Part shown: piece after piece, positions 5,459-64,000 of the stretch
Numbering within the stretch: position 1 is the stretch's first letter
How the letters are laid out: each line of letters starts with the position of its first letter
Source of the DNA: Paraphysomonas bandaiensis
Taxonomy: Eukaryota; Protista; Chrysophyceae
DNA length: 64,000 nt
Direction: 5' to 3'
NCBI GenBank assembly: GCA_965644295.1
Contig: CBFFRP010000645.1
Span: forward strand, 124,001-188,000
Notes under the pieces: model-generated
What the model saw: only the letters and a program-made list of their open reading frames with translations
Database searches by the model: none
What the model was told of the DNA's origin: nothing
Made by a program: the position numbers and the translations under genes

Positions 5459-5490
<32 letters not shown>

Positions 5491-18205: not shown

Positions 18206-18288
18206 TGTAATATATGAATATGTATGTATAGGGAATGGAAGAGAAGTGAGAGTACGTGAATTGAATGAAGTGTAATGAAGAATGAAGT

Positions 18289-36207: not shown

Positions 36208-36346
36208 TATATGGTAGGTATACTATGAGCACTCAACTGATAGATTGACTCGACGAGTTATATATACATATATATACATACAAACCCCACATAGAGCTAC
36301 ACACCCAGAATCTTACCATAGTATCTTACACAGGTACCATATACAG

Positions 36347-39054: not shown

Positions 39055-40730
39055 TCACCATGTGATACATAATCTTAATATGTGCTTCGACTTCTTGTGA
39101 AACGCTGGGTTTTCGGCCAAATCCTGGGCACTCTGACTGTCGATGAAGAATGGTGCGGGTCTGATGAGCCTCAACTTATTCTCACCCGTCACCCCCCGAA
39201 CCCATAGCACTTCTTGGAGACCCGAGTAAATACACTGATACTCAGACTGCATGCTTGACGTTGCCACTGTCGTCTGCAATTTGGACTGCCAGACTATAGG
39301 CCCTCCCGCTGCAAACCCAACGTACCCCGACGTGGACTTCCTGGACAGCTGGTCTCCCGCCCAATCTGCGCAGAAAGCATATGGAAGTCGAACCGTCTGC
39401 TCCCATATTGAATCCCTTTGTCAATAGAGCCACGAATATATTGCCATACGTATGTTAATAACTTGCATACTTCAATATTCACCTCATTACTGAACCGAGA
39501 CAGTACTCTCCGACTGCATGCTTGACGTTGCCACTGTCGTCTGCAATTTGGACTGCCAGACTATAGGCCCTCCCGCTGCAAACCCAACGTACCCCGACGT
39601 GGACTTCCTGGACAGCTGGTCTCCCGCCCAATCTGCGTCAGAAAACATATGGAAGTCGAACCGTCTGCTCCCATATTGAATCTCTTTGTCAATAGAACCA
39701 CGAATATATTGCCATACATATGTTAATAGTTTGCATACTTCAATATTCACCTCATTACTGAACCGAGACAGTACTCCCATTGCATAGGCAATATCCGGCC
39801 TCGTGTTCATCGATAGATATAGTATTGCACCTATCAGCGGCTCAGCGGTCGATATGGGAAGTTATCTACTATAAGCTGTTCCTCCTCGGTATGCTCATGC
39901 CACGCCCCTTTTGCCACTAAATCTACATATTGCTTCCGCTGGTAGAGGACTCGTCCGTACCTTCCGCGGTGGCCCAAGGTTCTTTTCAAACTTTTCTAAG
40001 ATCTTAGCCGCATATAGGATTGGTCATGACGAATATACTCTGGCGTCCTTGTGACTCGAACATTCAGAAAATGTTCCATCTTGCCCATGTCCTTCATATC
40101 AAATCGGGCACACAGTTGAGCTTTAATATCCTTCACTATATTGACATCACGACCTAAAGCTAGGATATCATCCACATATATCATTAATAATACCAATTCA
40201 ACGCCCTTATACTGATAATACAAACACGGGTCTATTACACATGGTTTAAAATGCATAGATCGTATGAATTTATCCAATGTTTTCCACCACGACCGCGAGG
40301 AACTCCGAAGCCCGTATAACAACATCTTCAACTTAAAGCAGTACCCCTTAGGCAGCTGAAAGTACGGAGTTGCCTTCATATATACGTCCCCCTCTATATC
40401 TGCATATTGAAATGCGTTAGACACACCCAGTTGATGAATTACCATGTTCACCACGAAGGCTATGGATTAACAGTCGCACTGTTACCCCCATAATAACGGG
40501 AGCAAAATGGTTCGCCCAAGCACTCGACTGCTGTCCACAACCGATTGCTACAAGACGAGCCTTATATCGGCGGACCTCTCCCGCCTTATCGTACATCTTT
40601 CCATAGACGTACTTGGAGTGCAGTGGGACGACTCCGTCCGGTATACGAGTCACCTCCACGGTGTCTCGCTTCGCCAGACCCTCTCGCTCTGCTCGTCTCC
40701 ACTCCCTGTGCTCGGCACTCTCCAAGGGCT
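39055..40730 (-). pseudogene. Decayed Ty1/copia reverse transcriptase + RNase H
   Basis: YKARLVA, LYGLRSS, MIYVDDIL, TRPDIAYA, FSDADWAGD..RKSTSG, SSMQSEY, IDSQSA, KSKHI, spread over several frames (frameshifts). Confidence 0.92.
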
Positions 40731-41789
40731 TGTGACCACGTGGCATTTCACATGCCTCAGTCACGTGTCTATAGTAAGTGCAAAACTACTAACTACGGGA
40801 TGAAGACAGAGACGATAGAAGTATCAGAAACATATCATTATTACGCTACAGATTACTGAAGAACTAGCACTAGGACTGGAGGTACAATTTCCCATAATCT
40901 GCCAACAGCTCTTCGCCGGCCGCAACTGCCCGAGTGGTCTGCACCCAGACCACGTCCAAGCCGGACTCATCTACTACAAATTCGCAGTTGAAGCGCCAGC
41001 CAGCAGCATGGTCAGAAGGATACACCGTGTTTATATACCTACCATGATTATGAGGCACCCGGGCCAAATAAGCTTGGGACCCCAGCGGCCAAAGGTAACC
41101 CATGTCCCGAGTGTCCCGCTCCGCATCTATATAGAAGTCCTTAGCCATCTCAAGTATATATGCTCCCCAGCTGGGACGGGAGGTATACACTTCACCGCTG
41201 TAGAGGCAGAAACGCAGTCCTAGCTCTAAATCCTGTAAGGAGAATAAACCTTGCTGTTCAGGCTTATCGCCCTGAGGGTTGGTGGATCTGTAGTGGCAGA
41301 CATTGTTTATGCAGCAATGGATATGATGTATGTATCTGATGTGGACATTGGTTCTTAGTCTGAGATAGTAGATGTAGGAAAAGCATCATACGGTATGCTG
41401 CACACTCACATACATGTTGGTCCATTGTAATACAGTAGCAGTACTCTGAATACGCAGTATTCAACGGCTAATTTACAAACTGGCGAGTGTGGTGTGTGGT
41501 GTCATCGCGAGTGTGGTGTGTTGTGCTTGTTCTATGTTGCATTGCTTTACAGCTCAGTGTTTTGTTAAGTGTTGTTCTGTTTGTACACTAGTGTTCTGAC
41601 TTCACTGGAGGTGGGGTTTGCGCGGTGATTCTTGGAGGGAGTCACTAGTACAAGCTTGCAACGCTTGACATACTGTTTAGAGTAATAATCATCCTGTTCT
41701 CCTGCAATCAGACGTACATATAGCTCTGGTTAACTCATTGTGTTTGTTTCTGCTGCACAGCCTTGGTTATCAAACCTGGCTGTGTCATA
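40731..41789 (+). repeat. Gypsy 5' LTR (1059 bp)
   Basis: Direct repeat of 48283-49341; no differences noticed by eye and ORF translations are identical. Confidence 0.95.
40870..41385 (-). CDS. SET-domain protein encoded antisense within the 5' LTR (stop-to-stop frame; true start unresolved)
   Basis: Extending the listed 106-aa ORF upstream gives ...YRSTNPQGDKPEQQGLFSLQDLELGLRFCLYSGEVY...YIDA...GRYINT...NCEF...VWVQTTRAVAAGEELLADYGKLY, i.e. the SET motifs in canonical order. Confidence 0.8.
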   Translation of the reverse strand, partial: CFSYIYYLRLRTNVHIRYIHHIHCCINNVCHYRSTNPQGDKPEQQGLFSLQDLELGLRFCLYSGEVYTSRPSWGAYILEMAKDFYIDAERDTRDMGYLWPLGSQAYLARVPHNHGRYINTVYPSDHAAGWRFNCEFVVDESGLDVVWVQTTRAVAAGEELLADYGKLYLQS

Positions 41790-42316
41790 GTAATTAATTA
41801 CTGAAAAAAGCAGATCAGCGCTGATAGTAATTGTTACACATACAACTCATTTTGCAATATTTGCAACACTTGTTATTCTTGCACATTAGAATACTGAGCT
41901 TGGCCTTTATTAGCCTCCTCATATTCGAATAGTTCTTAGAGTCTATAGATTGCATACCAGTGCAAGCTTAGGAATTAAGGAGTGATATCTTGCAGTGTTT
42001 GAGAATACATATCCGTGAGCGCGGACTCCGTTAGACTGCGTCGTTAAGAGTGTACCTTGAACACTGCAACAAACTCAACATTTTGGAAAACTGCTCTTAT
42101 CGCATTGACAACTGACCGTCTGCGAAATGAGTGGATACCTCAATTATTGAGTGGGTGAGATAGACCTTGTAAGAGACTTGCAATACAATTTTATCGCATA
42201 GACAACTGACTGCCTGCGAAATACTTGTACAGCAATATCTACATAGTTTGATCTTGCGATAGCTCCAATAAACCTGAGCCCAAGCTGTCCTGTAATTAAT
42301 AAGACCGCAATTCAAA

Positions 42317-44119
42317 ATGTCTACTCCTAGTGGCAAAAGGACCAGCAAGAAGCCGTCCACTGCTCCACGGCGTCCTAAACCAGTGGTACAGGAGGACTCA
42401 CCAGATAAAATAGATGAAAGTCAATACGAAGAAGCGCCCATGATACCTTCACCTTCTGCCCCAGCATCCTCAGCAACCCAACAGATTCTGGACTCAGTAC
42501 AGGAGATCCAAGGCACCCTGGGACAAGTAGCCTTTGCGATATCCAACCTAGACAGTAGGGTACAAGCTCTGGAGAGTTCTAAGAGAGCAGATACACCTGA
42601 TTCATCAGACACCCAGAGTGATGACACACCTGATTCATTCAGCAGCAAGGGCAGTAAAGCAAATACCACACCCAGGGGAGTCACTAAGCGTGCTAAGAAA
42701 GACCGACCAAAACCCCGTTATTCCACTTTAGGAGATCTGGCTACATTCAGGAGATTGCCAGAGAAGAAAGAGCAACTGAGTGAGGAGAGCTCCGACTCAG
42801 AGCTTGAGGAAGAGGCAGAAGAACATTTGGGGCGTCTTGCCAGTGTTTTTGGAGAGAAACGTCCAGGAAAGTTCTTCCGGAATTTGAAACGCAGCGCCAA
42901 GGTGGCCCAAGCTAAGACTGTCAATATAACTAGGCTGGAGAAGAAGTGTCACGTCAGGATCGAGACATTCAAACTTGGTAGAGTTTCAAGGGCGATCAAG
43001 GAGATTCTGGATTTCCAAGAAGAGGAAGAAACAGAAGTCCGCATCCAGAAAGTTTTATCTAGAAACCTGAAGGATCACTTGCGTTCCGTCTATGATATTC
43101 AACACGCAGAATTAGCTAGCATGGACATATCTGACCTCATGAGAATCGTAGCCCTAGAGACGAAAGTTTTCAGCTGTGTTGGGTTTTACAACGAGCTGAA
43201 AGAATCTCTCAGCCATATGAAGGTCATGGAGTGGGACAATGTCAACGCTGTCAATTTTGAAGCCTTCTATTTTCAACAACTTCGTTTGATAGAATCCTTT
43301 AAAAGGATGTTGTCTATCATGTTGGAAAATGAAAGCAACAGGCGTTGGTGTCCACAGGCTGACGACAAGGAATACGGCCTTATTAGGCTATTTAAAACCC
43401 TGAACGACGTCACATATGTGAAATTTGTTCTAGGTTGTATTCCGAAGAAGAAGTTCGACTTTATGGAAGACTTCTTCAAACTATATACGGAGGTACTGTT
43501 AGACCATTACCAGATCACGATTGCTTATAAACAGTTGCCCTTCAAAGCAACCGTGCAACATCAGGCGAAGTATGAGGAATACATGAAGCGCAAGCGTGAA
43601 ATGTTTTCTAGACCTAAGTCTGGAGTGGCAAAGAATTCCACTAGCACCCACTCTTCTACCAGGTTATTTAACATGGAAGAGGAACGGGCTTCTTTTTCTT
43701 CCAATGAATTTTCTCATGATGAAGAAGATTTATGGGATGCCTATGGGGATACATGGAAAAGCAACAACCACAGTACCGATGTTCCTACTGGCGGCAAACC
43801 TAATGGCGAGCCAGCGACCGAAACTTCTGAAGAGAAAGATACATCCGACTCAGAAGGAGCTTTGCAAGCTATGGATGGCCAGAATCCATCTCATAAACCC
43901 AAACAAGAGAAGTATGGGTGCATGAGAAAAATCATGTATGGCAAGTGCGACAAGAGTGATTGTCGTTATAGCCATAATCCTAGAGCTCTCGCCAATACCG
44001 CTTCGGAATTGGCTGAGAAATCCCAAGCTTATTTGAAGACCACTTCTTCAACTTCGGGGTCTCAGGATAAACCTCCTGCTATTTTAAGGAGAGATCGCTT
44101 CGGCGACTCTCGTCCTTGA
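42317..44119 (+). CDS. gag: Gypsy Gag-like protein with C-terminal CCCH finger
   Basis: 600-aa ORF between 5' LTR and pol; CMRKIMYGKCDKSDCRYSH near the end. Confidence 0.85.
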   Translation: MSTPSGKRTSKKPSTAPRRPKPVVQEDSPDKIDESQYEEAPMIPSPSAPASSATQQILDSVQEIQGTLGQVAFAISNLDSRVQALESSKRADTPDSSDTQSDDTPDSFSSKGSKANTTPRGVTKRAKKDRPKPRYSTLGDLATFRRLPEKKEQLSEESSDSELEEEAEEHLGRLASVFGEKRPGKFFRNLKRSAKVAQAKTVNITRLEKKCHVRIETFKLGRVSRAIKEILDFQEEEETEVRIQKVLSRNLKDHLRSVYDIQHAELASMDISDLMRIVALETKVFSCVGFYNELKESLSHMKVMEWDNVNAVNFEAFYFQQLRLIESFKRMLSIMLENESNRRWCPQADDKEYGLIRLFKTLNDVTYVKFVLGCIPKKKFDFMEDFFKLYTEVLLDHYQITIAYKQLPFKATVQHQAKYEEYMKRKREMFSRPKSGVAKNSTSTHSSTRLFNMEEERASFSSNEFSHDEEDLWDAYGDTWKSNNHSTDVPTGGKPNGEPATETSEEKDTSDSEGALQAMDGQNPSHKPKQEKYGCMRKIMYGKCDKSDCRYSHNPRALANTASELAEKSQAYLKTTSSTSGSQDKPPAILRRDRFGDSRP

Positions 44120-44134
44120 GATAAGGAGGTTAAC

Positions 44135-47100
44135 ATGATTGAGGACCTAGAAGAACATGTGATCAGTGTTTGTGATGGGAATGATGATTGTGATTATCTC
44201 CCAGAGGCTAAAACATTGAATACTACTTCTTCAAAGGTCCATTTCAAGGATGGAGCTAAGCTGTATGCTTCATATCCTTCAGCCAAGAAATTTTCATCAG
44301 CACATACTGTAGGTAGAGTAATTATAGACAAGAAGTTCGGAGTGGAAGAATTAGTGAAAGTTTTATGTGACACAGGAGCCCTATCCGCTAACTACGTAGC
44401 ACGTGATCTTGTGGATAGATTGCGTACCAAGCTAGAACCTAGCAGGTTCTACAAGGTCAAACACCGTGTGGTTTTGGCAGACAGTAGAACCGTAAAGGAT
44501 CTTGACGAAGGGGTTCGATTGAACTTAGTGTTTACCGATCCCAAGAGTCACACTTACCAGTACACTGGTGAGTTCATCGTGATCGACATGTCATCTAATG
44601 ACATTATTTTGGGACTACCAGCCCTCACTGGGAAGCTATACCCTTTCATGTGTGCTGTCATGGAGCAGGCCCATGAGAATCATCTCGAAGATTCGGCTCA
44701 AGGGAACCATAATTTGAGTGCCCTACAAAATGAGGACATGGAATCCAGAGAGGAACACCGACGTCCCTGGAGTAAAGCGAATGATGCTATCGCTCCAGAA
44801 GATAACGAGACTGAGTTACCCGTTCAATTCAAAGATGCTTTGACATTCCTCGGAAAGTCTAGAGAGGAAGCTCTTAACGACTACTATGAACAAATAGAAA
44901 CTCACGTCAGTCAGGAGATGAAACAAGAGACCAACATTATGGATCTCTTATCTTCCAAAGCTGAGAAGGTATTCGTGCCTGATGAGTGGACAGGAGTCCG
45001 AGGTGTTGACCCTTTGACTCTTAAGTGGAAAGAAACTTTACCTGAAAGAATGAAACCCAGAGCCAGGCCGATCAACCCTAAGCTCTGGGAAGCATCCGAA
45101 AAGGAGTTCAGGAGACTATGTGGTTATTTTTACCAGAAGAGCAGATCTCCTTGGGCTTCATGCTTGGTGGTTGCTCCCAAGGCTACTCCACCTTATATCC
45201 GATTCTGCGGGGATTATGTTAACATCAACAAGCACATGCAAGTGGGTAATTATACAATTCCCAATGTCAAGCATGAATTGGACAAGATCATCAATTTCCC
45301 ATTGTATATGGATATCGACTTGACCAACGCTTTCCATCAGATACCTCTAGCGGAAGAAACATCAGAGAGGCTTTCTATCCAGACGCCATGGGGCCAATAT
45401 GCGCCAAAGTTCATGCCAGAAGGTATTGCGCCGGCTACTGGAATTCTGCAAGAGGTAGTCAGGGAAATATTTGAAGATTTTTCTGACTGGGCCATTGTAA
45501 TATTTGACAACATGTTGATATTGGCCAACGACCCTCAAGATGCGTATCAGAAATTTGAGAAAGTGATTGACAGATGCATCGAGAGGAATCTCAAACTGAA
45601 AATGCCAAAGAGTTGGCTTGGATTTAGAAAAGTAGACTTCTTCGGATACGTATGCAGACACAAATCCTATGAAGTCAATCCTGAGAAGAAGGAAGCCCTA
45701 GGCAAAATCCCAATGCCTACCAACACCAAACAAGCGAGGTCTCTGCTTGGCAAGGGCGTGTTCTTTTCCAGTTTTACCCCTAGATATTCAGACTTGGTTG
45801 CTCATCTCACAGATTTGACCAAATCGAAATTCAATTGGGACAAGACTACGTGGCGGCACGATTATGAGGCTGAATATCGTCGCTTCATAAAAGGCCTGCA
45901 AGATTCCTGCGAATTGTTCTACCCAGACTACAATTTGGAGTGGACACTGCGTACTGACGCTAGTGAGCTAGGAATCGGCTCGGTGCTTCTGCAGAAAAAG
46001 ATTCTCGCAGATGGAACAGAGCAGTTGCAACCCATTGCCTTCCTATCAAAGAAGTTTTCAGCTCAGGCTCAGAAATGGGCTACGATAGAGCAAGAAGCTT
46101 ATGGTATTTACTACAGTGTCAAGCACTTAGCGTACTATTTGATTGGGAAGCAGTTCACTATAGAGACTGACCACAATAATCTCTTGTGGATGGAGTCGTC
46201 TGAAGTACCTAAGATCACAAGATGGAGAATTTTCTTGCAATCTTTCAACTTCAGCATTAAACACATATCGGGTGCCAAGAATTGGTTAGCCGATTGGTTA
46301 TCTCGGGAGCATCAAGTTGCGGCGTTGTCCGGTATATTCTTAGATGAAGACTATGCCGATGCCTACTTCCTTGGAGAGGACTGCACTGAGGATGAATTTT
46401 TTAACTTCTTGGGCAATTTTATGAACCCAGAAGACAGGGAAGTATCTCCTCATGCGCAAAGTTCAGTCACTCCCGAGGATGCCTTGCAACAAGTACATAA
46501 TGCCCGAGTTGGACATCTCGGTGGGCGAGCCACTTGGATTCGACTTAATAAGCAATTCCCCGGCCATGGAATTCCTTACAAAGTAGTCGAAGACTTCATT
46601 GCGAAGTGTCCAAACTGTGTTAAGACTAGATTGGCGATGAAAGAAGCGCTGATCCCTATAGTCCGAAACCTTAAGCCTCCGAGCGCTCGGAGTGCTATTG
46701 GTATTGATGCGGTAGAAATCACACCCCATGGTGCTGATGGATACACGCACATTAATGTCGTAGTCAACCTGTTCACCAAGTTAGTTTATCTTGAGCCAGT
46801 CAAAGGAGTGACTGCCCTCAACTTGGCAAACACGGTATGGAAGTATTGGAGTTACTACGGACACACTGATCTTATCATCTCAGATCAGGGTCCTGACCTA
46901 ACTTCCGATCTTTTCAAACAACTGACTGAATATATGGGCGTCCGACACACCTTCAGCATAGCCAACAGGCATGCTAATGGTTGTGAACGCATCATCGGTG
47001 AGGTGGTCCGACATTTGCGTGCCCTAGTATATGAAAACAGCAAGCGTGTAGAACGAAAGGATGTTTTTGAGGATCCCAGCTGGATACCCAGCGCTCAATA

Positions 47101-48100
47101 CATTCTGAATTCAGAAGTCTCATCCGAGACGGGGTACTCACCCTTTGAGCTCACTTTTGGCTCTAATGATCTGGAATATTTAACTATGAATATACAGACT
47201 TTGCCTGAGCGTGCACACGCCAGACTGACTGCTCTTAATGAACAGTTAGAAGGCCTACGGGCGGCTTCCAAAACTTACCAGCAGCAGTTAGCGAGTGAAC
47301 GTGCTGGGGAGGGAGTTCACCCGGACAAGCAGAACCGATATCAACCGGGCGACTTCATTTTATTTGACAAAGGCGCCAAGGTTCATCCCAAGATGTCACA
47401 TCGATACATGGGACCTTTTGTTGTTAAGACCCAGTACAAAAATGACATTGATTGTCAGCACCTTGCTACAGGGCAAGTGGTACGTGTTTCAGTGACAGAC
47501 GTCAAACTGTTTCCAGGTGATAGAGAAACTGCGTACAGCATGGCTCTACGAGACCAGGATCAGCATGTCATTGACAAGATTCTCTACTATCGGGGTGACA
47601 GAGAGTCACGCTCCACTTTGACTTTTACTGTGAGATTTCAGGATGGTGATGTCAGAGAAGTGCCTTATAGCAAGGACCTTTTTGACTCAGTGCCTTACGC
47701 GGACTTTTGTTCCAGCAAACGGTACCTCTACCACCTGATTTATCCAGCGGAGGGTGCCAAGAAATATATCTCGGACATCCGACGCCAGTCTATCACTCAG
47801 TTCAAACCCGGTGACCATGCATATGTTGACCTACGCATTTATGGCGACGTATGGTACGACGGACTGCAGTTACCAGACTCCCACTTACTGACCTATGTAG
47901 CTCCGATCCAGTTCACACACTGGTATCATCGAAGCTCTAGGAGAGTATTATCCGTCAAGGATCTTCTCACTCTCCGCACTTACCGTTATGACAACTACCT
48001 CGTGCATTGTTTCGTTCACCCTGAACTAGACACTAGCACTATGGTACTCGTCGACAAGGACTTGGCTACACGCTACCCTCAAGTCCTTGAGTCCGCTTAG
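44135..48100 (+). CDS. pol: Gypsy Pol: protease, RT, RNase H, integrase, chromodomain-like C-terminus
   Basis: LCDTGA; PWAS..RFCGDY, DLTNAFHQI, MPEG, IFDN; TDAS, EQEAY, ETDH, ADWLSR; H..H..CPNC, IDAV, SDQG, CER; GPF; HVIDKILYYRG..FTVRF. Confidence 0.97.
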   Translation: MIEDLEEHVISVCDGNDDCDYLPEAKTLNTTSSKVHFKDGAKLYASYPSAKKFSSAHTVGRVIIDKKFGVEELVKVLCDTGALSANYVARDLVDRLRTKLEPSRFYKVKHRVVLADSRTVKDLDEGVRLNLVFTDPKSHTYQYTGEFIVIDMSSNDIILGLPALTGKLYPFMCAVMEQAHENHLEDSAQGNHNLSALQNEDMESREEHRRPWSKANDAIAPEDNETELPVQFKDALTFLGKSREEALNDYYEQIETHVSQEMKQETNIMDLLSSKAEKVFVPDEWTGVRGVDPLTLKWKETLPERMKPRARPINPKLWEASEKEFRRLCGYFYQKSRSPWASCLVVAPKATPPYIRFCGDYVNINKHMQVGNYTIPNVKHELDKIINFPLYMDIDLTNAFHQIPLAEETSERLSIQTPWGQYAPKFMPEGIAPATGILQEVVREIFEDFSDWAIVIFDNMLILANDPQDAYQKFEKVIDRCIERNLKLKMPKSWLGFRKVDFFGYVCRHKSYEVNPEKKEALGKIPMPTNTKQARSLLGKGVFFSSFTPRYSDLVAHLTDLTKSKFNWDKTTWRHDYEAEYRRFIKGLQDSCELFYPDYNLEWTLRTDASELGIGSVLLQKKILADGTEQLQPIAFLSKKFSAQAQKWATIEQEAYGIYYSVKHLAYYLIGKQFTIETDHNNLLWMESSEVPKITRWRIFLQSFNFSIKHISGAKNWLADWLSREHQVAALSGIFLDEDYADAYFLGEDCTEDEFFNFLGNFMNPEDREVSPHAQSSVTPEDALQQVHNARVGHLGGRATWIRLNKQFPGHGIPYKVVEDFIAKCPNCVKTRLAMKEALIPIVRNLKPPSARSAIGIDAVEITPHGADGYTHINVVVNLFTKLVYLEPVKGVTALNLANTVWKYWSYYGHTDLIISDQGPDLTSDLFKQLTEYMGVRHTFSIANRHANGCERIIGEVVRHLRALVYENSKRVERKDVFEDPSWIPSAQYILNSEVSSETGYSPFELTFGSNDLEYLTMNIQTLPERAHARLTALNEQLEGLRAASKTYQQQLASERAGEGVHPDKQNRYQPGDFILFDKGAKVHPKMSHRYMGPFVVKTQYKNDIDCQHLATGQVVRVSVTDVKLFPGDRETAYSMALRDQDQHVIDKILYYRGDRESRSTLTFTVRFQDGDVREVPYSKDLFDSVPYADFCSSKRYLYHLIYPAEGAKKYISDIRRQSITQFKPGDHAYVDLRIYGDVWYDGLQLPDSHLLTYVAPIQFTHWYHRSSRRVLSVKDLLTLRTYRYDNYLVHCFVHPELDTSTMVLVDKDLATRYPQVLESA

Positions 48101-48282
48101 AGCACGGGACCAATCAACTTACACGTGACCTTCCAACTCCAACGCTCCTCTGCTGCACCTTCGTTTTGATGGCTAATTTTTAGTTCCGTTGAAATTTGTG
48201 GGCCGCAGAGTGACGCCCGTCTTCATCATTTCGCATAATACTTATATCAAACAAAAAAAAAAAAAAAAGGGAGGCGGGGCAA

Positions 48283-49341
48283 TGTGACCACGTGGCATTT
48301 CACATGCCTCAGTCACGTGTCTATAGTAAGTGCAAAACTACTAACTACGGGATGAAGACAGAGACGATAGAAGTATCAGAAACATATCATTATTACGCTA
48401 CAGATTACTGAAGAACTAGCACTAGGACTGGAGGTACAATTTCCCATAATCTGCCAACAGCTCTTCGCCGGCCGCAACTGCCCGAGTGGTCTGCACCCAG
48501 ACCACGTCCAAGCCGGACTCATCTACTACAAATTCGCAGTTGAAGCGCCAGCCAGCAGCATGGTCAGAAGGATACACCGTGTTTATATACCTACCATGAT
48601 TATGAGGCACCCGGGCCAAATAAGCTTGGGACCCCAGCGGCCAAAGGTAACCCATGTCCCGAGTGTCCCGCTCCGCATCTATATAGAAGTCCTTAGCCAT
48701 CTCAAGTATATATGCTCCCCAGCTGGGACGGGAGGTATACACTTCACCGCTGTAGAGGCAGAAACGCAGTCCTAGCTCTAAATCCTGTAAGGAGAATAAA
48801 CCTTGCTGTTCAGGCTTATCGCCCTGAGGGTTGGTGGATCTGTAGTGGCAGACATTGTTTATGCAGCAATGGATATGATGTATGTATCTGATGTGGACAT
48901 TGGTTCTTAGTCTGAGATAGTAGATGTAGGAAAAGCATCATACGGTATGCTGCACACTCACATACATGTTGGTCCATTGTAATACAGTAGCAGTACTCTG
49001 AATACGCAGTATTCAACGGCTAATTTACAAACTGGCGAGTGTGGTGTGTGGTGTCATCGCGAGTGTGGTGTGTTGTGCTTGTTCTATGTTGCATTGCTTT
49101 ACAGCTCAGTGTTTTGTTAAGTGTTGTTCTGTTTGTACACTAGTGTTCTGACTTCACTGGAGGTGGGGTTTGCGCGGTGATTCTTGGAGGGAGTCACTAG
49201 TACAAGCTTGCAACGCTTGACATACTGTTTAGAGTAATAATCATCCTGTTCTCCTGCAATCAGACGTACATATAGCTCTGGTTAACTCATTGTGTTTGTT
49301 TCTGCTGCACAGCCTTGGTTATCAAACCTGGCTGTGTCATA
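48283..49341 (+). repeat. Gypsy 3' LTR (1059 bp), preceded by an A-rich polypurine tract at about 48253-48282
   Basis: Repeat of the 5' LTR; preceded by a long A run then gggaggcggggcaa. Confidence 0.95.
48422..48937 (-). CDS. Second copy of the LTR-borne SET-domain frame
   Basis: Same translation as 40870-41385. Confidence 0.8.
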   Translation of the reverse strand, partial: CFSYIYYLRLRTNVHIRYIHHIHCCINNVCHYRSTNPQGDKPEQQGLFSLQDLELGLRFCLYSGEVYTSRPSWGAYILEMAKDFYIDAERDTRDMGYLWPLGSQAYLARVPHNHGRYINTVYPSDHAAGWRFNCEFVVDESGLDVVWVQTTRAVAAGEELLADYGKLYLQS

Positions 49342-50075
49342 GGCTCACGATGTGTCTGAGGCACTGTTGACTCTTCCGCTGACATCCACACTGAGTCTGC
49401 CTCCTGCAATAGGTCACTCACATCACCCTCATCACTCAAATGATGGATTTGTCCTAACACTGACACATTCGTTACTGTCCTTGGAGTTCTTGCACGTTTG
49501 TCAGTAGCTCTGGCCCTAACCACCCTCTGCGCAAGATCCTCTGTCATCTTCTTGATGTCAGCAATGTGATTAGGAGTTTTATCCTCCACTTGAAACTGGT
49601 TACCAGTAACCACAACGACCAGTATCCCACAATAAGCCCCTTTCTTATCAGCACTCTGTTGGTCTTGTATAGCAGACCACCGTCCTCATGCTTTCCGATA
49701 AGATACTCAAACTCACCCGGTTGGTGAGCCTTGGGGTATATAGCCACTTGAGCCTCCTCCAGCTCTCTATAATAATCTTTTGACCTCTCAGGTACCGATT
49801 CATCAAACAATACATGTACAGAGTGTACTACGGTGTCCCCCACTAGCACCTTGTATCCTTTTCGATCAGCTGGATACCCTATGAAGTAACCTGTAATTGC
49901 TTTGTCCTCCCAGTCCTTTCTCCTGTCGGCCTTGGGTGTTAGCACGTATGCTTTACACTCCCATTTCCGTAGCCACAATAGGCTAGGAACGCTCCCCCCT
50001 GGGACACACTCATATGGAGACATCCATTCTTGCCACGTCCGAGTTGGCATTCGTCGCACAATATGACTGTGTACA
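49342..50075 (-). pseudogene. Decayed copia integrase C-terminal region and linker (upstream part of the interrupted element; 5' portion missing)
   Basis: SPYE, LRKWECKAYVL, KAITGYFIGY, KGYKV, HVLFDE are typical post-integrase copia motifs; frameshifted. Confidence 0.85.
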
Positions 50076-50262
50076 CCCATGGACAAAGGCAAGTGATGTC
50101 ATTGCACCAGAGGATGTTATGTCTCCATCTGCTCATGGTAATCTCGGAGAGCTTCCTCACGAGACTTCCCTAAGAATGCTAAAGCATCCCTAAACTGAGC
50201 TGGCAGTTCAGCTCCTCATCCACCGGTATAATAACATCACTTGCTTTTGTCCATGGGTTATA
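50076..50262 (-). pseudogene. Fragment of a related gypsy pol (protease-RT linker) with a short inverted duplicate
   Basis: Minus strand reads PWTKASDVIIP..ELPAQFRDALAFLGKSREEALRDYHEQMET, matching Pol PWSKANDAIAP..ELPVQFKDALTFLGKSREEALNDYYEQIET (about 44765-44905). Plus strand 50076-50114 reads PWTKASDVIAPED. Confidence 0.85.
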
Positions 50263-50267
50263 TTGTG

Positions 50268-53200
50268 CAACCATCACGACAAGTGCTGACAGTACGGGTT
50301 ATCCCATTCATGGCCTATCTCTCGCAATATGCCCACGACCATACCTATGAAACAATACATACCATTATAAACACATGCACGCAAACATATATAACCCAAA
50401 CCACAAAATAATAATACATACATGGCACACAACTATAGCATCAGACTAGGGTTATTTAAGACTATCATCATATTCGAAAATCGATTGAAACGTCCTTGAA
50501 TAAGTATCATGTGCTACGATGATTGGTATGCCATGCCCACAACTACACCACATTACATAGACACAACATATATCCATACAGGTACACATACCGGATGACC
50601 ACACAATCAATGTGCGGTAGCTCATAATCAACCATCACGACAAGTGCTGACAGTACGGGTTATCCCATTCATGGCCTATCTCTCGCAATATGCCCACGAC
50701 CATACCTATGAAACAATACATACCATTATAAACACATGCACGCAAACATATATAACCCAAACCACAAAATAATAATACATACATGGCACACAACTATAGC
50801 ATCAGACTAGGGTTATTTAAGACTATCATCATATTCGAAAATCGATTGAAACGTCCTTGAATAAGTATCATGTGCTACGATGATTGGTATGCCATGCCCA
50901 CAACTACACCACATTACATAGACACAACAGATATCCATACAGGTACACATACCGGATGACCACACAATCAATGTGCGGTAGCTCATAATCAACCATCACG
51001 ACAAGTGCTGACAGTACGGGTTATCCCATTCATGGCCTATCTCTCGCAATATGCCCACGACCATACCTATGAAACAATACATACCATTATAAACACATGC
51101 ACGCAAACATATATAACCCAAACCACAAAATAATAATACATACATGGCACACAACTATAGCATCAGACTAGGGTTATTTAAGACTATCATCATATTCGAA
51201 AATCGATTGAAACGTCCTTGAATAAGTATCATGTGCTACGATGATTGGTATGCCATGCCCACAACTACACCACATTACATAGACACAACAGATATCCATA
51301 CAGGTACACATACCGGATGACCACACAATCAATGTGCGGTAGCTCATAATCAACCATCACGACAAGTGCTGACAGTACGGGTTATCCCATTCATGGCCTA
51401 TCTCTCGCAATATGCCCACGACCATACCTATGAAACAATACATACCATTATAAACACATGCACGCAAACATATATAACCCAAACCACAAAATAATAATAC
51501 ATACATGGCACACAACTATAGCATCAGACTAGGGTTATTTAAGACTATCATCATATTCGAAAATCGATTGAAACGTCCTTGAATAAGTATCATGTGCTAC
51601 GATGATTGGTATGCCATGCCCACAACTACACCACATTACATAGACACAACATATATCCATACAGGTACACATACCGGATGACCACACAATCAATGTGCGG
51701 TAGCTCATAATCAACCATCACGACAAGTGCTGACAGTACGGGTTATCCCATTCATGGCCTATCTCTCGCAATATGCCCACGACCATACCTATGAAATAAC
51801 ACATACCATTATAAACACATGCACGCAAACATATAAAACCCAAACCACAAAATAATAATACATACATGGCACACAACTATAGCATCAGACTAGGGTTATT
51901 TAAGACTATCATCATATTCGAAAATCGATTGAAACGTCCTTGAATAAGTATCATGTGCTACGATAATTGGTATGCCATGCCCACAACTACACCACATTAC
52001 ATAGACACAACATATATCCATACAGGTACACATACCGGATGACCACACAATCAATGTGCGGTAGCTCATAATCAACCATCACGACAAGTGCTGACAGTAC
52101 GGGTTATCCCATTCATGGCCTATCTCTCGCAATATGCCCACGACCATACCTATGAAACAATACATACCATTATAAACACATGCACGCAAACATATATAAC
52201 CCAAACCACAAAATAATAATACATACATGGCACACAACTATAGCATCAGACTAGGGTTATTTAAGACTATCATCATATTCGAAAATCGATTGAAACGTCC
52301 TTGAATAAGTATCATGTGCTACGATGATTGGTATGCCATGCCCACAACTACACCACATTACATAGACACAACATATATCCATACAGGTACACATACCGGA
52401 TGACCACACAATCAATGTGCGGTAGCTCATAATCAACCATCACGACAAGTGCTGACAGTACGGGTTATCCCATTCATGGCCTATCTCTCGCAATATGCCC
52501 ACGACCATACCTATGAAACAATACATACCATTATAAACACATGCACGCAAACATATAAAACCCAAACCACAAAATAATAATACATACATGGCACACAACT
52601 ATAGCATCAGACTAGGGTTATTTAAGACTATCATCATATTCGAAAATCGATTGAAACGTCCTTGAATAAGTATCATGTGCTACGATGATTGGTATGCCAT
52701 GCCCACAACTACACCACATTACATAGACACAACATATATCCATACAGGTACACATACCGGATGACCACACAATCAATGTGCGGTAGCTCATAATCAACCA
52801 TCACGACAAGTGCTGACAGTACGGGTTATCCCATTCATGGCCTATCTCTCGCAATATGCCCACGACCATACCTATGAAACAATACATACCATTATAAACA
52901 CATGCACGCAAACATATAAAACCCAAACCACAAAATAATAATACATACATGGCACACAACTATAGCATCAGACTAGGGTTATTTAAGACTATCATCATAT
53001 TCGAAAATCGATTGAAACGTCCTTGAATAAGTATCATGTGCTACGATGATTGGTATGCCATGCCCACAACTACACCACATTACATAGACACAACATATAT
53101 CCATACAGGTACACATACCGGATGACCACACAATCAATGTGCGGTAACTCATAATCAACCATCACGACAAGTGCTGACAGTACGGGTTATCCCATTCATG

Positions 53201-56200
53201 GCCTATCTCTCGCAATATGCCCACGACCATACCTATGAAACAATACATACCATTATAAACACATGCACGCAAACATATATAACCCAAACCACAAAATAAT
53301 AATACATACATGGCACACAACTATAGCATCAGACTAGGGTTATTTAAGACTATCATCATATTCGAAAATCGATTGAAACGTCCTTGAATAAGTATCATGT
53401 GCTACGATGATTGGTATGCCATGCCCACAACTACACCACATTACATAGACACAACATATATCCATACAGGTACACATACCGGATGACCACACAATCAATG
53501 TGCGGTAGCTCATAATCAACCATCACGACAAGTGCTGACAGTACGGGTTATCCCATTCATGGCCTATCTCTCGCAATATGCCCACGACCATACCTATGAA
53601 ACAATACATACCATTATAAACACATGCACGCAAACATATAAAACCCAAACCACAAAATAATAATACATACATGGCACACAACTATAGCATCAGACTAGGG
53701 TTATTTAAGACTATCATCATATTCGAAAATCGATTGAAACGTCCTTGAATAAGTATCATGTGCTACGATGATTGGTATGCCATGCCCACAACTACACCAC
53801 ATTACATAGACACAACATATATCCATACAGGTACACATACCGGATGACCACACAATCAATGTGCGGTAGCTCATAATCAACCATCACGACAAGTGCTGAC
53901 AGTACGGGTTATCCCATTCATGGCCTATCTCTCGCAATATGCCCACGACCATACCTATGAAACAATACATACCATTATAAACACATGCACGCAAACATAT
54001 AAAACCCAAACCACAAAATAATAATACATACATGGCACACAACTATAGCATCAGACTAGGGTTATTTAAGACTATCATCATATTCGAAAATCGATTGAAA
54101 CGTCCTTGAATAAGTATCATGTGCTACGATGATTGGTATGCCATGCCCACAACTACACCACATTACATAGACACAACATATATCCATACAGGTACACATA
54201 CCGGATGACCACACAATCAATGTGCGGTAGCTCATAATCAACCATCACGACAAGTGCTGACAGTACGGGTTATCCCATTCATGGCCTATCTCTCGCAATA
54301 TGCCCACGACCATACCTATGAAACAATACATACCATTATAAACACATGCACGCAAACATATAAAACCCAAACCACAAAATAATAATACATACATGGCACA
54401 CAACTATAGCATCAGACTAGGGTTATTTAAGACTATCATCATATTCGAAAATCGATTGAAACGTCCTTGAATAAGTATCATGTGCTACGATGATTGGTAT
54501 GCCATGCCCACAACTACACCACATTACATAGACACAACATATATCCATACAGGTACACATACCGGATGACCACACAATCAATGTGCGGTAGCTCATAATC
54601 AACCATCACGACAAGTGCTGACAGTACGGGTTATCCCATTCATGGCCTATCTCTCGCAATATGCCCACGACCATACCTATGAAACAATACATACCATTAT
54701 AAACACATGCACGCAAACATATATAACCCAAACCACAAAATAATAATACATACATGGCACACAACTATAGCATCAGACTAGGGTTATTTAAGACTATCAT
54801 CATATTCGAAAATCGATTGAAACGTCCTTGAATAAGTATCATGTGCTACGATGATTGGTATGCCATGCCCACAACTACACCACATTACATAGACACAACA
54901 GATATCCATACAGGTACACATACCGGATGACCACACAATCAATGTGCGGTAGCTCATAATCAACCATCACGACAAGTGCTGACAGTACGGGTTATCCCAT
55001 TCATGGCCTATCTCTCGCAATATGCCCACGACCATACCTATGAAACAATACATACCATTATAAACACATGCACGCAAACATATATAACCCAAACCACAAA
55101 ATAATAATACATACATGGCACACAACTATAGCATCAGACTAGGGTTATTTAAGACTATCATCATATTCGAAAATCGATTGAAACGTCCTTGAATAAGTAT
55201 CATGTGCTACGATGATTGGTATGCCATGCCCACAACTACACCACATTACATAGACACAACATATATCCATACAGGTACACATACCGGATGACCACACAAT
55301 CAATGTGCGGTAGCTCATAATCAACCATCACGACAAGTGCTGACAGTACGGGTTATCCCATTCATGGCCTATCTCTCGCAATATGCCCACGACCATACCT
55401 ATGAAACAATACATACCATTATAAACACATGCACGCAAACATATATAACCCAAACCACAAAATAATAATACATACATGGCACACAACTATAGCATCAGAC
55501 TAGGGTTATTTAAGACTATCATCATATTCGAAAATCGATTGAAACGTCCTTGAATAAGTATCATGTGCTACGATGATTGGTATGCCATGCCCACAACTAC
55601 ACCACATTACATAGACACAACATATATCCATACAGGTACACATACCGGATGACCACACAATCAATGTGCGGTAGCTCATAATCAACCATCACGACAAGTG
55701 CTGACAGTACGGGTTATCCCATTCATGGCCTATCTCTCGCAATATGCCCACGACCATACCTATGAAACAATACATACCATTATAAACACATGCACGCAAA
55801 CATATATAACCCAAACCACAAAATAATAATACATACATGGCACACAACTATAGCATCAGACTAGGGTTATTTAAGACTATCATCATATTCGAAAATCGAT
55901 TGAAACGTCCTTGAATAAGTATCATGTGCTACGATGATTGGTATGCCATGCCCACAACTACACCACATTACATAGACACAACAGATATCCATACAGGTAC
56001 ACATACCGGATGACCACACAATCAATGTGCGGTAGCTCATAATCAACCATCACGACAAGTGCTGACAGTACGGGTTATCCCATTCATGGCCTATCTCTCG
56101 CAATATGCCCACGACCATACCTATGAAACAATACATACCATTATAAACACATGCACGCAAACATATATAACCCAAACCACAAAATAATAATACATACATG

Positions 56201-62200: not shown

Positions 62201-64000
62201 CAGTACGGGTTATCCCATTCATGGCCTATCTCTCGCAATATGCCCACGACCATACCTATGAAACAATACATACCATTATAAACACATGCACGCAAACATA
62301 TATAACCCAAACCACAAAATAATAATACATACATGGCACACAACTATAGCATCAGACTAGGGTTATTTAAGACTATCATCATATTCGAAAATCGATTGAA
62401 ACGTCCTTGAATAAGTATCATGTGCTACGATGATTGGTATGCCATGCCCACAACTACACCACATTACATAGACACAACATATATCCATACAGGTACACAT
62501 ACCGGATGACCACACAATCAATGTGCGGTAGCTCATAATCAACCATCACGACAAGTGCTGACAGTACGGGTTATCCCATTCATGGCCTATCTCTCGCAAT
62601 ATGCCCACGACCATACCTATGAAACAATACATACCATTATAAACACATGCACGCAAACATATATAACCCAAACCACAAAATAATAATACATACATGGCAC
62701 ACAACTATAGCATCAGACTAGGGTTATTTAAGACTATCATCATATTCGAAAATCGATTGAAACGTCCTTGAATAAGTATCATGTGCTACGATGATTGGTA
62801 TGCCATGCCCACAACTACACCACATTACATAGACACAACATATATCCATACAGGTACACATACCGGATGACCACACAATCAATGTGCGGTAGCTCATAAT
62901 CAACCATCACGACAAGTGCTGACAGTACGGGTTATCCCATTCATGGCCTATCTCTCGCAATATGCCCACGACCATACCTATGAAACAATACATACCATTA
63001 TAAACACATGCACGCAAACATATATAACCCAAACCACAAAATAATAATACATACATGGCACACAACTATAGCATCAGACTAGGGTTATTTAAGACTATCA
63101 TCATATTCGAAAATCGATTGAAACGTCCTTGAATAAGTATCATGTGCTACGATGATTGGTATGCCATGCCCACAACTACACCACATTACATAGACACAAC
63201 ATATATCCATACAGGTACACATACCGGATGACCACACAATCAATGTGCGGTAGCTCATAATCAACCATCACGACAAGTGCTGACAGTACGGGTTATCCCA
63301 TTCATGGCCTATCTCTCGCAATATGCCCACGACCATACCTATGAAACAATACATACCATTATAAACACATATAATCAACCATCACGACAAGTGCTGACAG
63401 TACGGGTTATCCCATTCATGGCCTATCTCTCGCAATATGCCTACGACCATACCTATGAAACAATACATACCATTATAAACACATGCACGCAAAACACATA
63501 TAACCCAAACCACAAAATAATAATACATACATGGCACACAACTATAGCATCAGACTAGGGTTATTTAAGACTATCATCATATTCGAAAATCGATTGAAAC
63601 GTCCTTGAATAAGTATCATGTGCTACGATGATTGGTATGCCATGCCCACAACTACACCACATTACATAGACACAACATATATCCATACAGGTACACATAC
63701 CGGATGACCACACAATCAATGTGCGGTAGCTCATAATCAACCATCACGACAAGTGCTGACAGTACGGGTTATCCCATTCATGGCCTATCTCTCGCAATAT
63801 GCCCACGACCATACCTATGAAACAATACATACCATTATAAACACATGCACGCAAACATATATAACCCAAACCACAAAATAATAATACATACATGGCACAC
63901 AACTATAGCATCAGACTAGGGTTATTTAAGACTATCATCATATTCGAAAATCTGATTGAAACGTCCTTGAATAAGTATCATGTGCTACGATGATTGGTAT
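50268..64000. repeat. 361-bp tandem satellite, about 38 copies, extending beyond the window (candidate centromeric/pericentromeric)
   Basis: accatcacga recurs at 50270, 50631, 50992 and onward. Copies are almost identical. Confidence 0.99.

What the first reader, a model, noticed from the sequence alone, without database searches (positions are those of the whole stretch)
40731..50300. Possible writer-reader targeting system: SET (LTR) + chromodomain-like integrase next to a satellite array
Seen: one element encodes both a SET frame and a chromodomain-like integrase tail, and sits about 0.9 kb from a >13 kb satellite. A fragment of a related gypsy lies right at the array edge. Known: chromoviral integrase tails direct integration to heterochromatin, and plant CRM elements accumulate at centromeres. 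Inference: the element could deposit a methyl mark that its own integrase reads, reinforcing a (peri)centromeric niche.
Basis: inference. Interest (0 to 1): 0.8.

Follow-up and report, generated by a model that had tools for sequence, protein, structure and literature searches.

The report
Retrotransposon carrying its own SET gene
A very young gypsy-type jumping gene from a marine protist belongs to an apparently undescribed clade whose members carry their own histone-methyltransferase-like (SET) gene, here inside each LTR; this copy's SET gene is broken, and nothing yet shows that it steers the element to the neighbouring satellite.

Summary
The anatomy is largely real. Window 40731-49341 is an intact Ty3/gypsy element with 1059-bp LTRs that are 100% identical, a 4-bp GGCT target duplication, gag and a 1321-aa pol. 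It lies 926 bp from a 361-bp satellite of at least 13.7 kb.

A SET frame lies antisense inside each LTR. Near-identical Tara Oceans copies carry an intact 244-aa SET gene there. The window copy has a 301-bp frameshifting deletion in both LTRs, so it cannot make the enzyme.

SET is a conserved accessory of the clade. It is kept under purifying selection and has its own roughly 0.9-kb mRNA in a cultured relative. Only 21 relatives turned up among 5.8 billion proteins.

The integrase tail holds a degenerate chromodomain with two of three cage positions, plus a conserved 115-aa domain of unknown kind.

The writer-reader and centromere reading is not supported:
- The same tail occurs in a clade member without SET.
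- A SET-deleted lineage still transposes.
- Five copies of a sister subfamily have no satellite within 10 kb.

Copies do tend to sit beside related elements. I found no report of a SET gene in an LTR retrotransposon.

The parts
40727..40730 (.). Target-site duplication GGCT, 5' copy
   Evidence: The flank ends GGCT before TGTGACC. The LTR ends ...GTCATA, as in L002, L003 and L006.
40731..41789 (+). 5' LTR (TGTGAC...GTCATA), 1059 bp
   Evidence: 100% identical to the 3' LTR.
40870..41283 (-). SET remnant in the 5' LTR: residues 108-244 of the family's 244-aa protein, plus the stop codon
   Evidence: Pfam SET 23.7 bits; tblastn against P0001 gives 95.6% identity.
41284..41303 (-). Residual SET start codon and first codons, now out of frame with the SET remnant; the 301-bp deletion junction lies at 41282/41283
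   Evidence: This ATG reads 25 codons and then stops.
41790..41801 (+). Palindrome GTAATTAATTAC at the primer-binding-site position
   Evidence: A G...C-bounded A/T palindrome is kept in every subfamily.
42317..44119 (+). gag, 600 aa, with a weak CCCH zinc-finger hit
44135..48100 (+). pol, 1321 aa: protease DTG at aa 79, RT 377-505, RNase H 573-704, integrase 782-944, then a roughly 310-aa tail
45500..45511 (+). RT motif C reads I-F-D-N where Ty3 has Y-L-D-D
   Evidence: The F/Y-D-N core was found in all 41 clade Pols where the motif region could be read; the preceding residue is I in 40 and M in one.
47354..47509 (+). SH3-like integrase C-terminal domain (GPF motif)
   Evidence: Foldseek hits include the Ty3 and MVV integrase C-terminal domains.
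47570..47716 (+). Chromodomain-like module: three strands plus a helix
47750..48097 (+). Third conserved C-terminal domain, about 115 aa, of unknown kind
   Evidence: pLDDT is above 90; no sequence or family match.
48253..48282 (+). Polypurine tract directly upstream of the 3' LTR
48283..49341 (+). 3' LTR
48422..48835 (-). SET remnant in the 3' LTR, identical to the one in the 5' LTR
49342..49345 (.). Target-site duplication GGCT, 3' copy
49346..50120 (-). Copia integrase C-terminus (SH3_retrovirus domain) and linker; the host element of the nested insertion
   Evidence: SH3_retrovirus E 1.2e-16.
39999..40726 (-). Copia RT (RVT_2), continuing the interrupted copia
   Evidence: RVT_2 E 3.7e-31.
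50121..50256 (-). 135-bp fragment of a related gypsy pol (about Pol aa 211-256) at the satellite edge
   Evidence: 76% nt identity to L002 and 69% to the window element.
50268..64000 (+). 361-bp satellite, 38 monomers, running off the window
   Evidence: Monomers are 98.9-100% identical.

Best explanation
Shown:
- This is a freshly inserted, coding-intact Ty3/gypsy LTR retrotransposon of an unidentified marine pico- or nano-eukaryote, nested in an old copia in a repeat-dense stretch.
- It belongs to a clade whose members carry an antisense accessory gene after pol. In most members seen, that gene encodes a small SET-domain protein with a basic N-terminus.
- In the window's subfamily the polypurine tract lies upstream of that gene. 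The whole SET unit therefore sits in U3 of the LTR and is copied to both ends.
- The window copy is a deletion derivative whose SET is dead.

Inferred mechanism:
- SET is a trans-acting chromatin modifier, made from its own short antisense mRNA.
- It helps the family as a whole, for instance by setting or blocking a histone-lysine mark on element chromatin.
- It is dispensable in cis, so defective copies can ride on intact ones.
- The integrase tail (SH3-like domain, degenerate chromodomain, unknown third domain) tethers integration to chromatin typical of TE-rich regions. That would explain why copies land beside related elements.
- On this view, closeness to the satellite reflects that repeat-rich neighbourhood and is not satellite targeting.
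For: Identity and youth:
- Identical LTRs, a target duplication, a polypurine tract and the PR-RT-RH-IN order.

Family feature:
- SET lies antisense about 320-330 bp past the pol stop in subfamilies A and B (L001, L002, L004, L005, L013-L017), and about 145 bp past it in subfamily C (L022, L030-L032).
- It is inside the LTR in subfamilies A and B but internal in subfamily C.

Selection and expression:
- Between subfamilies A and B, pN is 0.34 against a saturated pS of 0.76-0.79.
- Within subfamily A, dN/dS is 0.09-0.57.
- The catalytic Tyr, the Asn of the NH motif and the Gly-rich motif are invariant across 14 relatives.
- An MMETSP transcript of 915 nt has a 5' UTR, a complete ORF and a 3' A-run.

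Dispensable in cis:
- The deleted LTR is present in both LTRs of a fresh insertion, and again in L012.

Tail:
- Conserved to the last residue in 43 Pols.
- The AF2 model has pLDDT 84 and shows three barrel-type modules.
- Foldseek hits are SETDB1 triple Tudor, MBT repeats and Ty3 integrase.
- The chromo-like part aligns in register with a canonical chromoviral chromodomain (hhalign E 1.5e-4).

Neighbourhood:
- A related element lies within about 1.1 kb at 4 of 4 subfamily-A sites.
Against: - No enzymatic or binding data exist, and the substrate of SET is unknown.
- The closest solved relatives span H3K4, H3K14, H3K27me1, H4K20me1 and H3K9 enzymes at E 1e-7 to 1e-5, so specificity cannot be assigned.
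- The canonical His of the NHxC motif is Thr or Ser in the whole family.
- The evidence that copies sit beside related elements rests on four sites. Three come from short-read metagenome contigs, which can be chimeric.
- In the sister subfamily only L023 is clearly clustered with relatives. L031 has just a 55-bp LTR fragment.
- The organism was not identified and the rest of its genome could not be surveyed.
Confidence: 0.6

Rival explanations
1. The element's SET deposits a methyl-lysine mark. The chromo-like or third domain of its own integrase binds that mark. New copies therefore integrate where older copies have marked chromatin, building a pericentromeric or satellite-adjacent niche.
For: - Both modules co-occur in subfamilies A, B and C.
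- Two cage-aligned positions stay aromatic or His, and the turn after strand 2 is acidic in nearly all relatives (D-G-D/E).
- The whole tail resembles tandem methyl-lysine-reader folds such as the SETDB1 Tudor domains and MBT repeats.
- 4 of 4 subfamily-A insertion sites lie within about 1.1 kb of a related element.
- A second, older gypsy fragment of the clade sits at the satellite edge.
Against: - The tail is kept in a clade member with a non-SET antisense ORF.
- A SET-deleted lineage still transposes.
- There is no full aromatic cage and no Pfam Chromo hit.
- No satellite lies within 10 kb of the five subfamily-C copies, and no 361-bp repeat lies in four other subfamily-A flanks.
- How a diffusible enzyme would mark only element chromatin is unexplained.
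Confidence: 0.12
2. Passenger gene. The SET frame is a captured host gene fragment with no role for the element, carried along in the LTR.
For: - The window copy is truncated and still mobile.
- SET diverges faster than Pol: 54% aa identity between subfamilies A and B, against about 65-69% in the Pol tail.
Against: - Complete ORFs are kept in three subfamilies down to 31% identity.
- pN is well below pS.
- The catalytic residues are invariant.
- There is a discrete mRNA.
- At least five of the LTR copies fetched through Pol look-ups, which did not select on SET, carry a complete 244-aa ORF (L013-L017; a sixth, in L012, is open to the contig end).
- Nothing in the 21-member family carries a source name or a host annotation; contexts were looked at only for the members fetched here, and all of those lie in elements.
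Confidence: 0.08
3. Chance neighbourhood. The element lies near the satellite only because repeat-rich, gene-poor DNA tolerates insertions. The integrase does no targeting at all.
For: - The region 31-64 kb of the window is all repeats: a 51-bp minisatellite, tetranucleotide runs, copia and the satellite.
- Subfamily-C copies lie beside varied neighbours, including host genes.
Against: - The element is so young (identical LTRs) that selection has had little time to filter it.
- The tail is strongly conserved over 43 Pols, which points to a function.
- Related elements are nearby at 4 of 4 sites.
Confidence: 0.2

Closest known systems
Chromoviruses: Ty3/gypsy elements with an integrase C-terminal chromodomain, such as MAGGY, Tf1 and plant CRM (background knowledge; reviews PMC3059260, PMC2864245)
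   Same: - Same PR-RT-RH-IN order.
- A GPY/F-type SH3-like domain is followed at once by a module of three strands plus a helix.
- That module aligns in register with a canonical chromoviral chromodomain from L023.
   Different: - No Pfam Chromo hit.
- The third cage aromatic is deleted, and the first is mostly His.
- An extra conserved domain of about 115 aa follows.
- RT motif C reads I-F-D-N, not Y-x-D-D.
- The primer-binding-site position holds a palindrome.
- The element carries an antisense SET gene.
SET accessory genes of DNA transposons: HarbingerS, Helitron captures and Plavaka PAG2 (as summarised in bioRxiv 10.1101/2025.02.11.637652; see also PMC12730594)
   Same: A mobile element carries a SET-domain gene besides its transposition machinery.
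   Different: - Those are class II elements, whereas this is an LTR retrotransposon.
- Here the gene is antisense and, in two subfamilies, lies inside the LTR, so it is duplicated at each insertion.
- Four of my seven full-text searches were aimed at finding a SET-bearing LTR retrotransposon, and none found one.
PBCV-1 vSET, a virus-encoded minimal SET H3K27 methyltransferase (PDB 1n3j family)
   Same: A small SET protein with no post-SET domain, encoded by a genetic parasite and presumably acting on host chromatin.
   Different: - Only a marginal sequence match (E 0.011).
- The protein here has a basic N-terminus of about 100 aa and a conserved pre-SET region.
Legionella LegAS4/RomA-type SET effectors, plant ATXR5/6 and KMT5A/SET8: the closest solved sequences
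   Same: - Best PDB profile matches, at 2e-7 to 3e-6.
- LegAS4 and ATXR5 also lack the canonical His after the conserved Asn.
   Different: - Identity is low.
- The matches cover enzymes with different substrates, so no specificity can be carried over.
- The domain context is different.
LTR retrotransposons with extra or antisense ORFs (plant Retand/Tat lineages, PMC11963269), and MMTV sag, an ORF inside an LTR (background knowledge)
   Same: An additional ORF lies between pol and the 3' LTR, or inside the LTR.
   Different: As far as I know, those ORFs are not SET or any chromatin-modifying enzyme. The MMTV sag ORF is on the sense strand.

Membership tests
Ty3/gypsy (Metaviridae-type) LTR retrotransposon | Two direct LTRs with TG...CA-type inverted ends, flanked by a short target-site duplication | tested here: met
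   The 1059-bp LTRs are identical and read TGTGAC...GTCATA. The target duplication is GGCT.
Ty3/gypsy (Metaviridae-type) LTR retrotransposon | Pol domain order PR-RT-RNase H-IN | tested here: met
   DTG at aa 79, RVT_1 at 377-505, RT_RNaseH at 573-704, zinc finger and rve at 782-944. Ty3 RT (4ol8) matches at E 2e-27.
Ty3/gypsy (Metaviridae-type) LTR retrotransposon | A tRNA-complementary primer-binding site after the 5' LTR, and a polypurine tract before the 3' LTR | tested here: inconclusive
   The polypurine tract is present. The primer-binding-site position holds a palindrome that is not complementary to a tRNA CCA end, and it has no complement of 8 nt or more within the LTR.
Ty3/gypsy (Metaviridae-type) LTR retrotransposon | RT catalytic motif Y-x-D-D | tested here: not met
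   The motif reads I-F-D-N and aligns to YLDD of Ty3. The F/Y-D-N core was found in all 41 clade Pols where the region could be read. The family is plainly active, so this is a variant motif and not a dead enzyme.
Chromovirus (chromodomain-bearing gypsy) | A chromodomain recognisable by sequence at the integrase C-terminus | tested here: inconclusive
   No Pfam Chromo hit at E up to 10, and no PDB sequence hit. hhalign against a canonical chromoviral chromodomain gives probability 51% and E 1.5e-4, in register; a control domain gives 1.6%.
Chromovirus (chromodomain-bearing gypsy) | Chromo fold: a three-stranded sheet packed against a C-terminal helix | tested here: inconclusive
   AF2 gives strands at 137-144, 154-159 and 164-168 plus helices. 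The top Foldseek hits are cpSRP43, Swi6/Chp2/HP1, CBX3 and CDYL2 chromo or chromoshadow domains (TMt 0.5-0.62), but the best E is 0.09.
Chromovirus (chromodomain-bearing gypsy) | A three-residue aromatic cage for methyl-lysine (group I chromodomains) | tested here: not met
   Position 1 is H in 28, F in 7 and Y in 6 relatives. Position 2 is F in 26, Y in 14 and L in 1. Position 3 is absent, replaced by D-G-D/E.
SET-domain lysine methyltransferase | A SET domain above the Pfam gathering score | tested here: met
   The window remnant scores 23.7 bits against a cut-off of 22.4. Intact P0001 scores 22.4, and relatives score 29-51 bits.
SET-domain lysine methyltransferase | Conserved catalytic and SAM-binding residues: the Gly-rich motif, Y-x-G, the NH motif and the Tyr of ELxxDY | tested here: inconclusive
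   G119, Y135/G137, N192 and Y237 are invariant in 14 relatives. The His after N192 is always Thr or Ser. The window copy lacks the N-terminal half altogether.
SET-domain lysine methyltransferase | Methyltransferase activity on a defined lysine | not testable with these tools
   This needs an in vitro assay.
Centromeric retrotransposon (CRM-like niche) | Family copies enriched in centromeric satellite or CENH3 chromatin | tested here: inconclusive
   One copy lies 926 bp from a satellite of unknown chromosomal role. There is no 361-bp repeat in four other subfamily-A flanks, and no satellite within 10 kb of five subfamily-C copies. The source genome could not be surveyed.

The most novel reading that the evidence does not exclude
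A self-contained epigenetic niche builder. The LTR-borne SET writes a low-methylation histone mark on and around element copies. The cage-reduced chromodomain, with its acidic turn, and/or the unknown third domain of the integrase reads that mark. The clade thereby directs its own integration next to relatives. Solo LTRs would remain as free-standing SET genes.
Probability: 0.12. Interest if true: 0.9.

Novelty: new variant of a known kind. Interest (0 to 1): 0.66.

Why it matters
TE-borne chromatin enzymes are rare. Those reported so far sit in DNA transposons.

An LTR-retrotransposon clade that keeps its own SET gene under selection would be a new way for a retroelement to act on host chromatin. 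In some lineages the gene lies inside the LTR, so every insertion adds two copies and a solo LTR would keep one.

The elements are abundant and nearly identical across many Tara Oceans samples, and one is transcribed in a cultured strain. The idea is therefore directly testable.

The clade also carries two further oddities that bear on basic retroelement biochemistry. Its RT has D-N in place of D-D in motif C, and it has a palindrome where the primer-binding site should be.

Tried and rejected
- **LTR-end scan.** I scanned metagenome contigs for the last 20 nt of the LTR to collect insertion flanks. The single hit (L024) is a chance match in an unrelated 54% GC contig.
- **Viral fold search.** Foldseek of the whole tail against BFVD returned only generic SH3-repeat and phage proteins, plus a retroviral integrase C-terminal domain.
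- **Tail sequence searches.** PDB profile searches with the chromo-like part and the third domain found nothing at E up to 10. Pfam scans of all 41 members gave only sub-threshold Tudor, chromoshadow and DUF7141 hints.
- **Exact look-up.** The window's own Pol is not on record.
- **Solo LTRs rejected.** L003 and L006 looked like solo LTRs with an intact SET, but their two flanks do not share a target duplication. They may be chimeric assemblies.
- **Tf1-style self-priming rejected.** The LTR holds no complement of 8 nt or more to the primer-binding-site region.
- **L023 antisense ORF is not SET.** The 259-aa ORF scores hhalign probability 0.1% or less.
- **Spacer is not simply a related gypsy.** Most of it is copia.
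- **Organism.** It could not be named. Sources give only Tara, MMETSP or JGI identifiers.
- **Searches not run.** I did not run the large representative protein search. It was flagged as costly, and the word search and family scans had already placed the protein.
- **Scope.** The contig is not human. The element is not a virus of animals, people or crops.
Full report
**1. What is at the coordinates**

The window is eukaryotic.
- The left half carries host genes: a CHASE histidine kinase with a receiver domain, an EF-hand protein kinase, glycine-cleavage T protein and an FHA protein.
- From about 31 kb onward it is repeats: a 51-bp minisatellite, tetranucleotide runs, transposons and a 361-bp satellite.
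- It is not human.
- The element discussed belongs to a marine protist and is not a virus of animals, people or crops.

Window 40731-49341 is one complete LTR retrotransposon.
- The two LTRs are identical over 1059 bp and read TGTGAC...GTCATA.
- Comparison with related LTR ends fixes the boundary after CATA.
- That boundary gives a 4-bp target duplication, GGCT, at 40727-40730 and 49342-49345.
- A polypurine tract abuts the 3' LTR.
- gag is 600 aa and pol is 1321 aa; both are open.
- Pol runs protease (DTG), RT, RNase H and integrase. Ty3 RT is the best solved match, at E 2e-27.
- Identical LTRs and an intact target duplication mean a very recent insertion.

**2. The SET frame**

A SET-like frame exists, but on the minus strand and inside each LTR (40870-41283 and 48422-48835).
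- Pfam SET scores 23.7 bits against a gathering score of 22.4.
- The word search found a 244-aa protein at 96% identity (P0001, a cluster of 76 sequences) and four more relatives. One of them is a complete MMETSP transcript.
- Only residues 108-244 are present anywhere in the window.
- Tara contig L001 is 99% identical to the window element. Aligning the two shows that the window lacks 301 bp of the gene (L001 226-526).
- The loss removes residues 8-107 and shifts the frame.
- The remaining ATG (41303 and 48855) reads 25 codons and then stops.
- Both LTRs carry the deletion, so this copy cannot make the enzyme.

**3. SET is a family feature, not an accident of this copy**

Subfamily A means copies 99.2-99.5% identical to the window. 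I fetched these through a Pol look-up, which does not select on SET.
- L013 to L017 carry a complete 244-aa SET ORF in the LTR.
- The leftmost LTR copy of L012 is open as far as the contig runs.
- Scaffold L012 also shows the window's deleted form.

Subfamily B has pol about 75% identical at the nucleotide level. Its 1431-bp LTR contains a 245-aa SET.

Subfamily C comes from a long-read marine assembly and has about 59% Pol identity.
- It carries a 328-330-aa SET, antisense, between pol and the 3' LTR. The gene is therefore internal and not in the LTR.
- The boundary difference is explained by where the polypurine tract sits: upstream of SET in subfamilies A and B, downstream of it in C.

A fourth member, in L023 (Pol P0036), has the same Pol tail. 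Its antisense ORF is 259 aa and is not SET.

**4. Is SET functional for the family?**

- Nei-Gojobori counts between subfamilies A and B give pN 0.34 against a saturated pS of 0.76-0.79.
- Within subfamily A, dN/dS is 0.09-0.57, on few changes.
- A profile word search found 21 proteins among 5.77 billion. All are environmental and none carries a name.
- Every one tested is a clear Pfam SET domain.
- Across 14 relatives, the Gly-rich motif, Y-x-G, the Asn of the NH motif and the Tyr of ELLADYG are invariant.
- The His that normally follows the Asn is always Thr or Ser.
- The closest solved sequences are:
  - Legionella LegAS4/RomA-type effectors (2e-7);
  - ATXR5/6 (2e-6);
  - KMT5A/SET8 (3e-6);
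  - then EHMT2 and EZH2.
- Two of these groups also lack that His, so the variant does not argue against activity. The spread of substrates among them forbids a specificity call.
- MMETSP transcript L033 is 915 nt, with a 104-nt leader, the complete ORF and about 92 nt of trailer ending in an A-run. It looks like a discrete mRNA.
- In the window LTR the stop codon lies 139 bp from the LTR edge and about 480 bp of LTR lie upstream of the ATG. The whole transcription unit can therefore fit inside the LTR (inference).

**5. The integrase tail**

- The last 310 or so residues of Pol are conserved to the C-terminus in 43 Pols, down to 36% identity.
- An AlphaFold2 model built on that alignment has mean pLDDT 84. 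It shows three modules:
  - an SH3-like integrase C-terminal domain (tail 65-116);
  - a module of three strands plus a helix (tail 137-185);
  - a further beta-rich domain (tail 219-296, pLDDT above 90).
- The whole tail hits the SETDB1 triple Tudor domain (8e-5), MBT repeats and the Ty3 and MVV integrases. TM-scores are low, as expected for a flexible multi-domain query.
- Modelled alone, the middle module (pLDDT 73) has chromo and chromoshadow domains among its best hits: cpSRP43, Swi6, Chp2, HP1-alpha, CBX3 bound to H3K9me3, and CDYL2. TM-scores relative to the target are 0.5-0.62, but no hit has E below 0.09.
- Sequence tools see no chromodomain.
- A profile comparison with a canonical, Pfam-positive chromoviral chromodomain from a neighbouring element in L023 aligns 59 columns in register. 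Probability is 51% and E is 1.5e-4. The third domain, used as a control, gives 1.6%.
- In that register:
  - the first cage position is H in 28, F in 7 and Y in 6 relatives;
  - the second is F in 26, Y in 14 and L in 1, and never Trp;
  - the third is deleted, with a D-G-D/E turn in its place.
- My reading is that this is a chromodomain derivative whose methyl-lysine binding is unproven.
- The third domain matches nothing.

**6. Surroundings and the satellite**

- The element ends 926 bp from a 361-bp satellite. The array has 38 monomers at 98.9-100% identity and runs off the window, so it is at least 13.7 kb.
- Most of the spacer is copia. An SH3_retrovirus domain lies at about 49789-49996 on the minus strand (E 1.2e-16), and the copia RT resumes on the other side of the insertion at 40726-39999.
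- The gypsy element is therefore nested in a degraded copia.
The last 135 bp before the array (50121-50256, minus strand) are a piece of a related gypsy pol, about Pol aa 211-256. It is 76% identical to subfamily B.
- The satellite monomer matches none of the fetched loci.
- Whether the array is centromeric cannot be told from the sequence.

**7. Where do other copies sit?**

Three further insertion sites of subfamily A could be read in Tara contigs.
- In L029 the 5' flank reaches the interior of a subfamily-B LTR after 86 bp.
- In L025/L026 the 3' flank holds a related polypurine-tract-to-LTR junction about 400 bp away.
- In L013 the 3' flank holds a third subfamily's LTR end and palindrome about 1.1 kb away.
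- With the window, 4 of 4 sites have a related element within about 1.1 kb, and none has the satellite.
- These are short-read contigs, so chimeras are possible. The related pieces are only 81-87% identical in two of the cases, which k-mer chimeras would not produce.

For subfamily C on long contigs:
- Five copies have no tandem array within 10 kb.
- Their neighbours are copia, a piggyBac-like transposase, genes of polinton-like-virus type, and host genes.
- Only L023 is a cluster of clade members. L031 has a 55-bp LTR fragment.

**8. Judgement**

- The writer-reader idea is not excluded, but it is weakened by four results:
  - the tail occurs without SET;
  - a SET-deleted lineage is mobile;
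  - the aromatic cage is incomplete;
  - relatives are not associated with satellites.
- The better-supported reading has three parts:
  - a chromovirus-derived clade carries a trans-acting SET accessory gene;
  - its integrase tethers integration to TE-type chromatin;
  - the window copy is a SET-defective rider.
- Seven full-text searches, four of them aimed at this question, found SET accessory genes only in DNA transposons (Helitron, HarbingerS, Plavaka; bioRxiv 10.1101/2025.02.11.637652). None was found in an LTR retrotransposon.
- Those searches cover only the held library.

**9. Side findings**

- The RT motif C of the whole clade reads I-F-D-N where Ty3 has YLDD. A neighbouring chromovirus and the window's copia keep Y-x-D-D.
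- The primer-binding-site position is a palindrome bounded by G and C in every subfamily.

Noticed in passing
window 45500-45511 (Pol aa 456-459); also P0006-P0048: RT motif C reads I-F-D-N where Ty3 has Y-L-D-D. The F/Y-D-N core was found in all 41 clade Pols where the region could be read. A canonical chromovirus in L023 has YLDD and the window's copia has YVDD. The family is clearly active, so a D-to-N change in the catalytic pair appears to be tolerated.
   Followed up: partly
window 41790-41801; L002, L012, L013, L016, L022, L023, L030: Directly after the 5' LTR, where a tRNA primer-binding site is expected, every subfamily has a perfect A/T-rich palindrome bounded by G and C: GTAATTAATTAC, GTAAATATTTAC or GTAAATTTAC. 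It is not complementary to a tRNA CCA end, and it has no complement of 8 nt or more in the LTR. How reverse transcription is primed is unexplained.
   Followed up: partly
L032 1-6829: A sister-subfamily SET-gypsy copy sits next to a block of genes typical of polinton-like viruses or virophages: a VapE/DUF5906 primase-helicase, a GIY-YIG nuclease and a Pox_A32 packaging ATPase.
   Followed up: no
window 31462-35939: A 51-bp minisatellite of about 87 copies (90% matches) has embedded (TATG)n runs. It creates artificial ORFs of up to 1554 aa.
   Followed up: no
window 5332-6789, 18288-18906, 36346-36841: Three long tetranucleotide arrays of the same motif family, (ATAC)n or (GTAT)n, reach up to 364 copies and are interspersed with host genes.
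   Followed up: no
window 39241-39776: A 268-bp unit is duplicated in tandem (97% identity) downstream of the copia RT on the minus strand.
   Followed up: no
L023 7630-16029: A clade member with the same Pol tail carries, in the SET position, an antisense 259-aa ORF with no detectable family. It may be a second kind of accessory gene in this clade.
   Followed up: partly
L003 602-892; L030 22383-22634: DUF7869-type ORFs lie near SET-gypsy LTRs in two unrelated contigs. They may belong to another mobile element that shares the same neighbourhoods.
   Followed up: no
window 24580-27024: The host gene is a hybrid histidine kinase with a CHASE sensor domain and a receiver domain, in one 814-aa open frame.
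   Followed up: no
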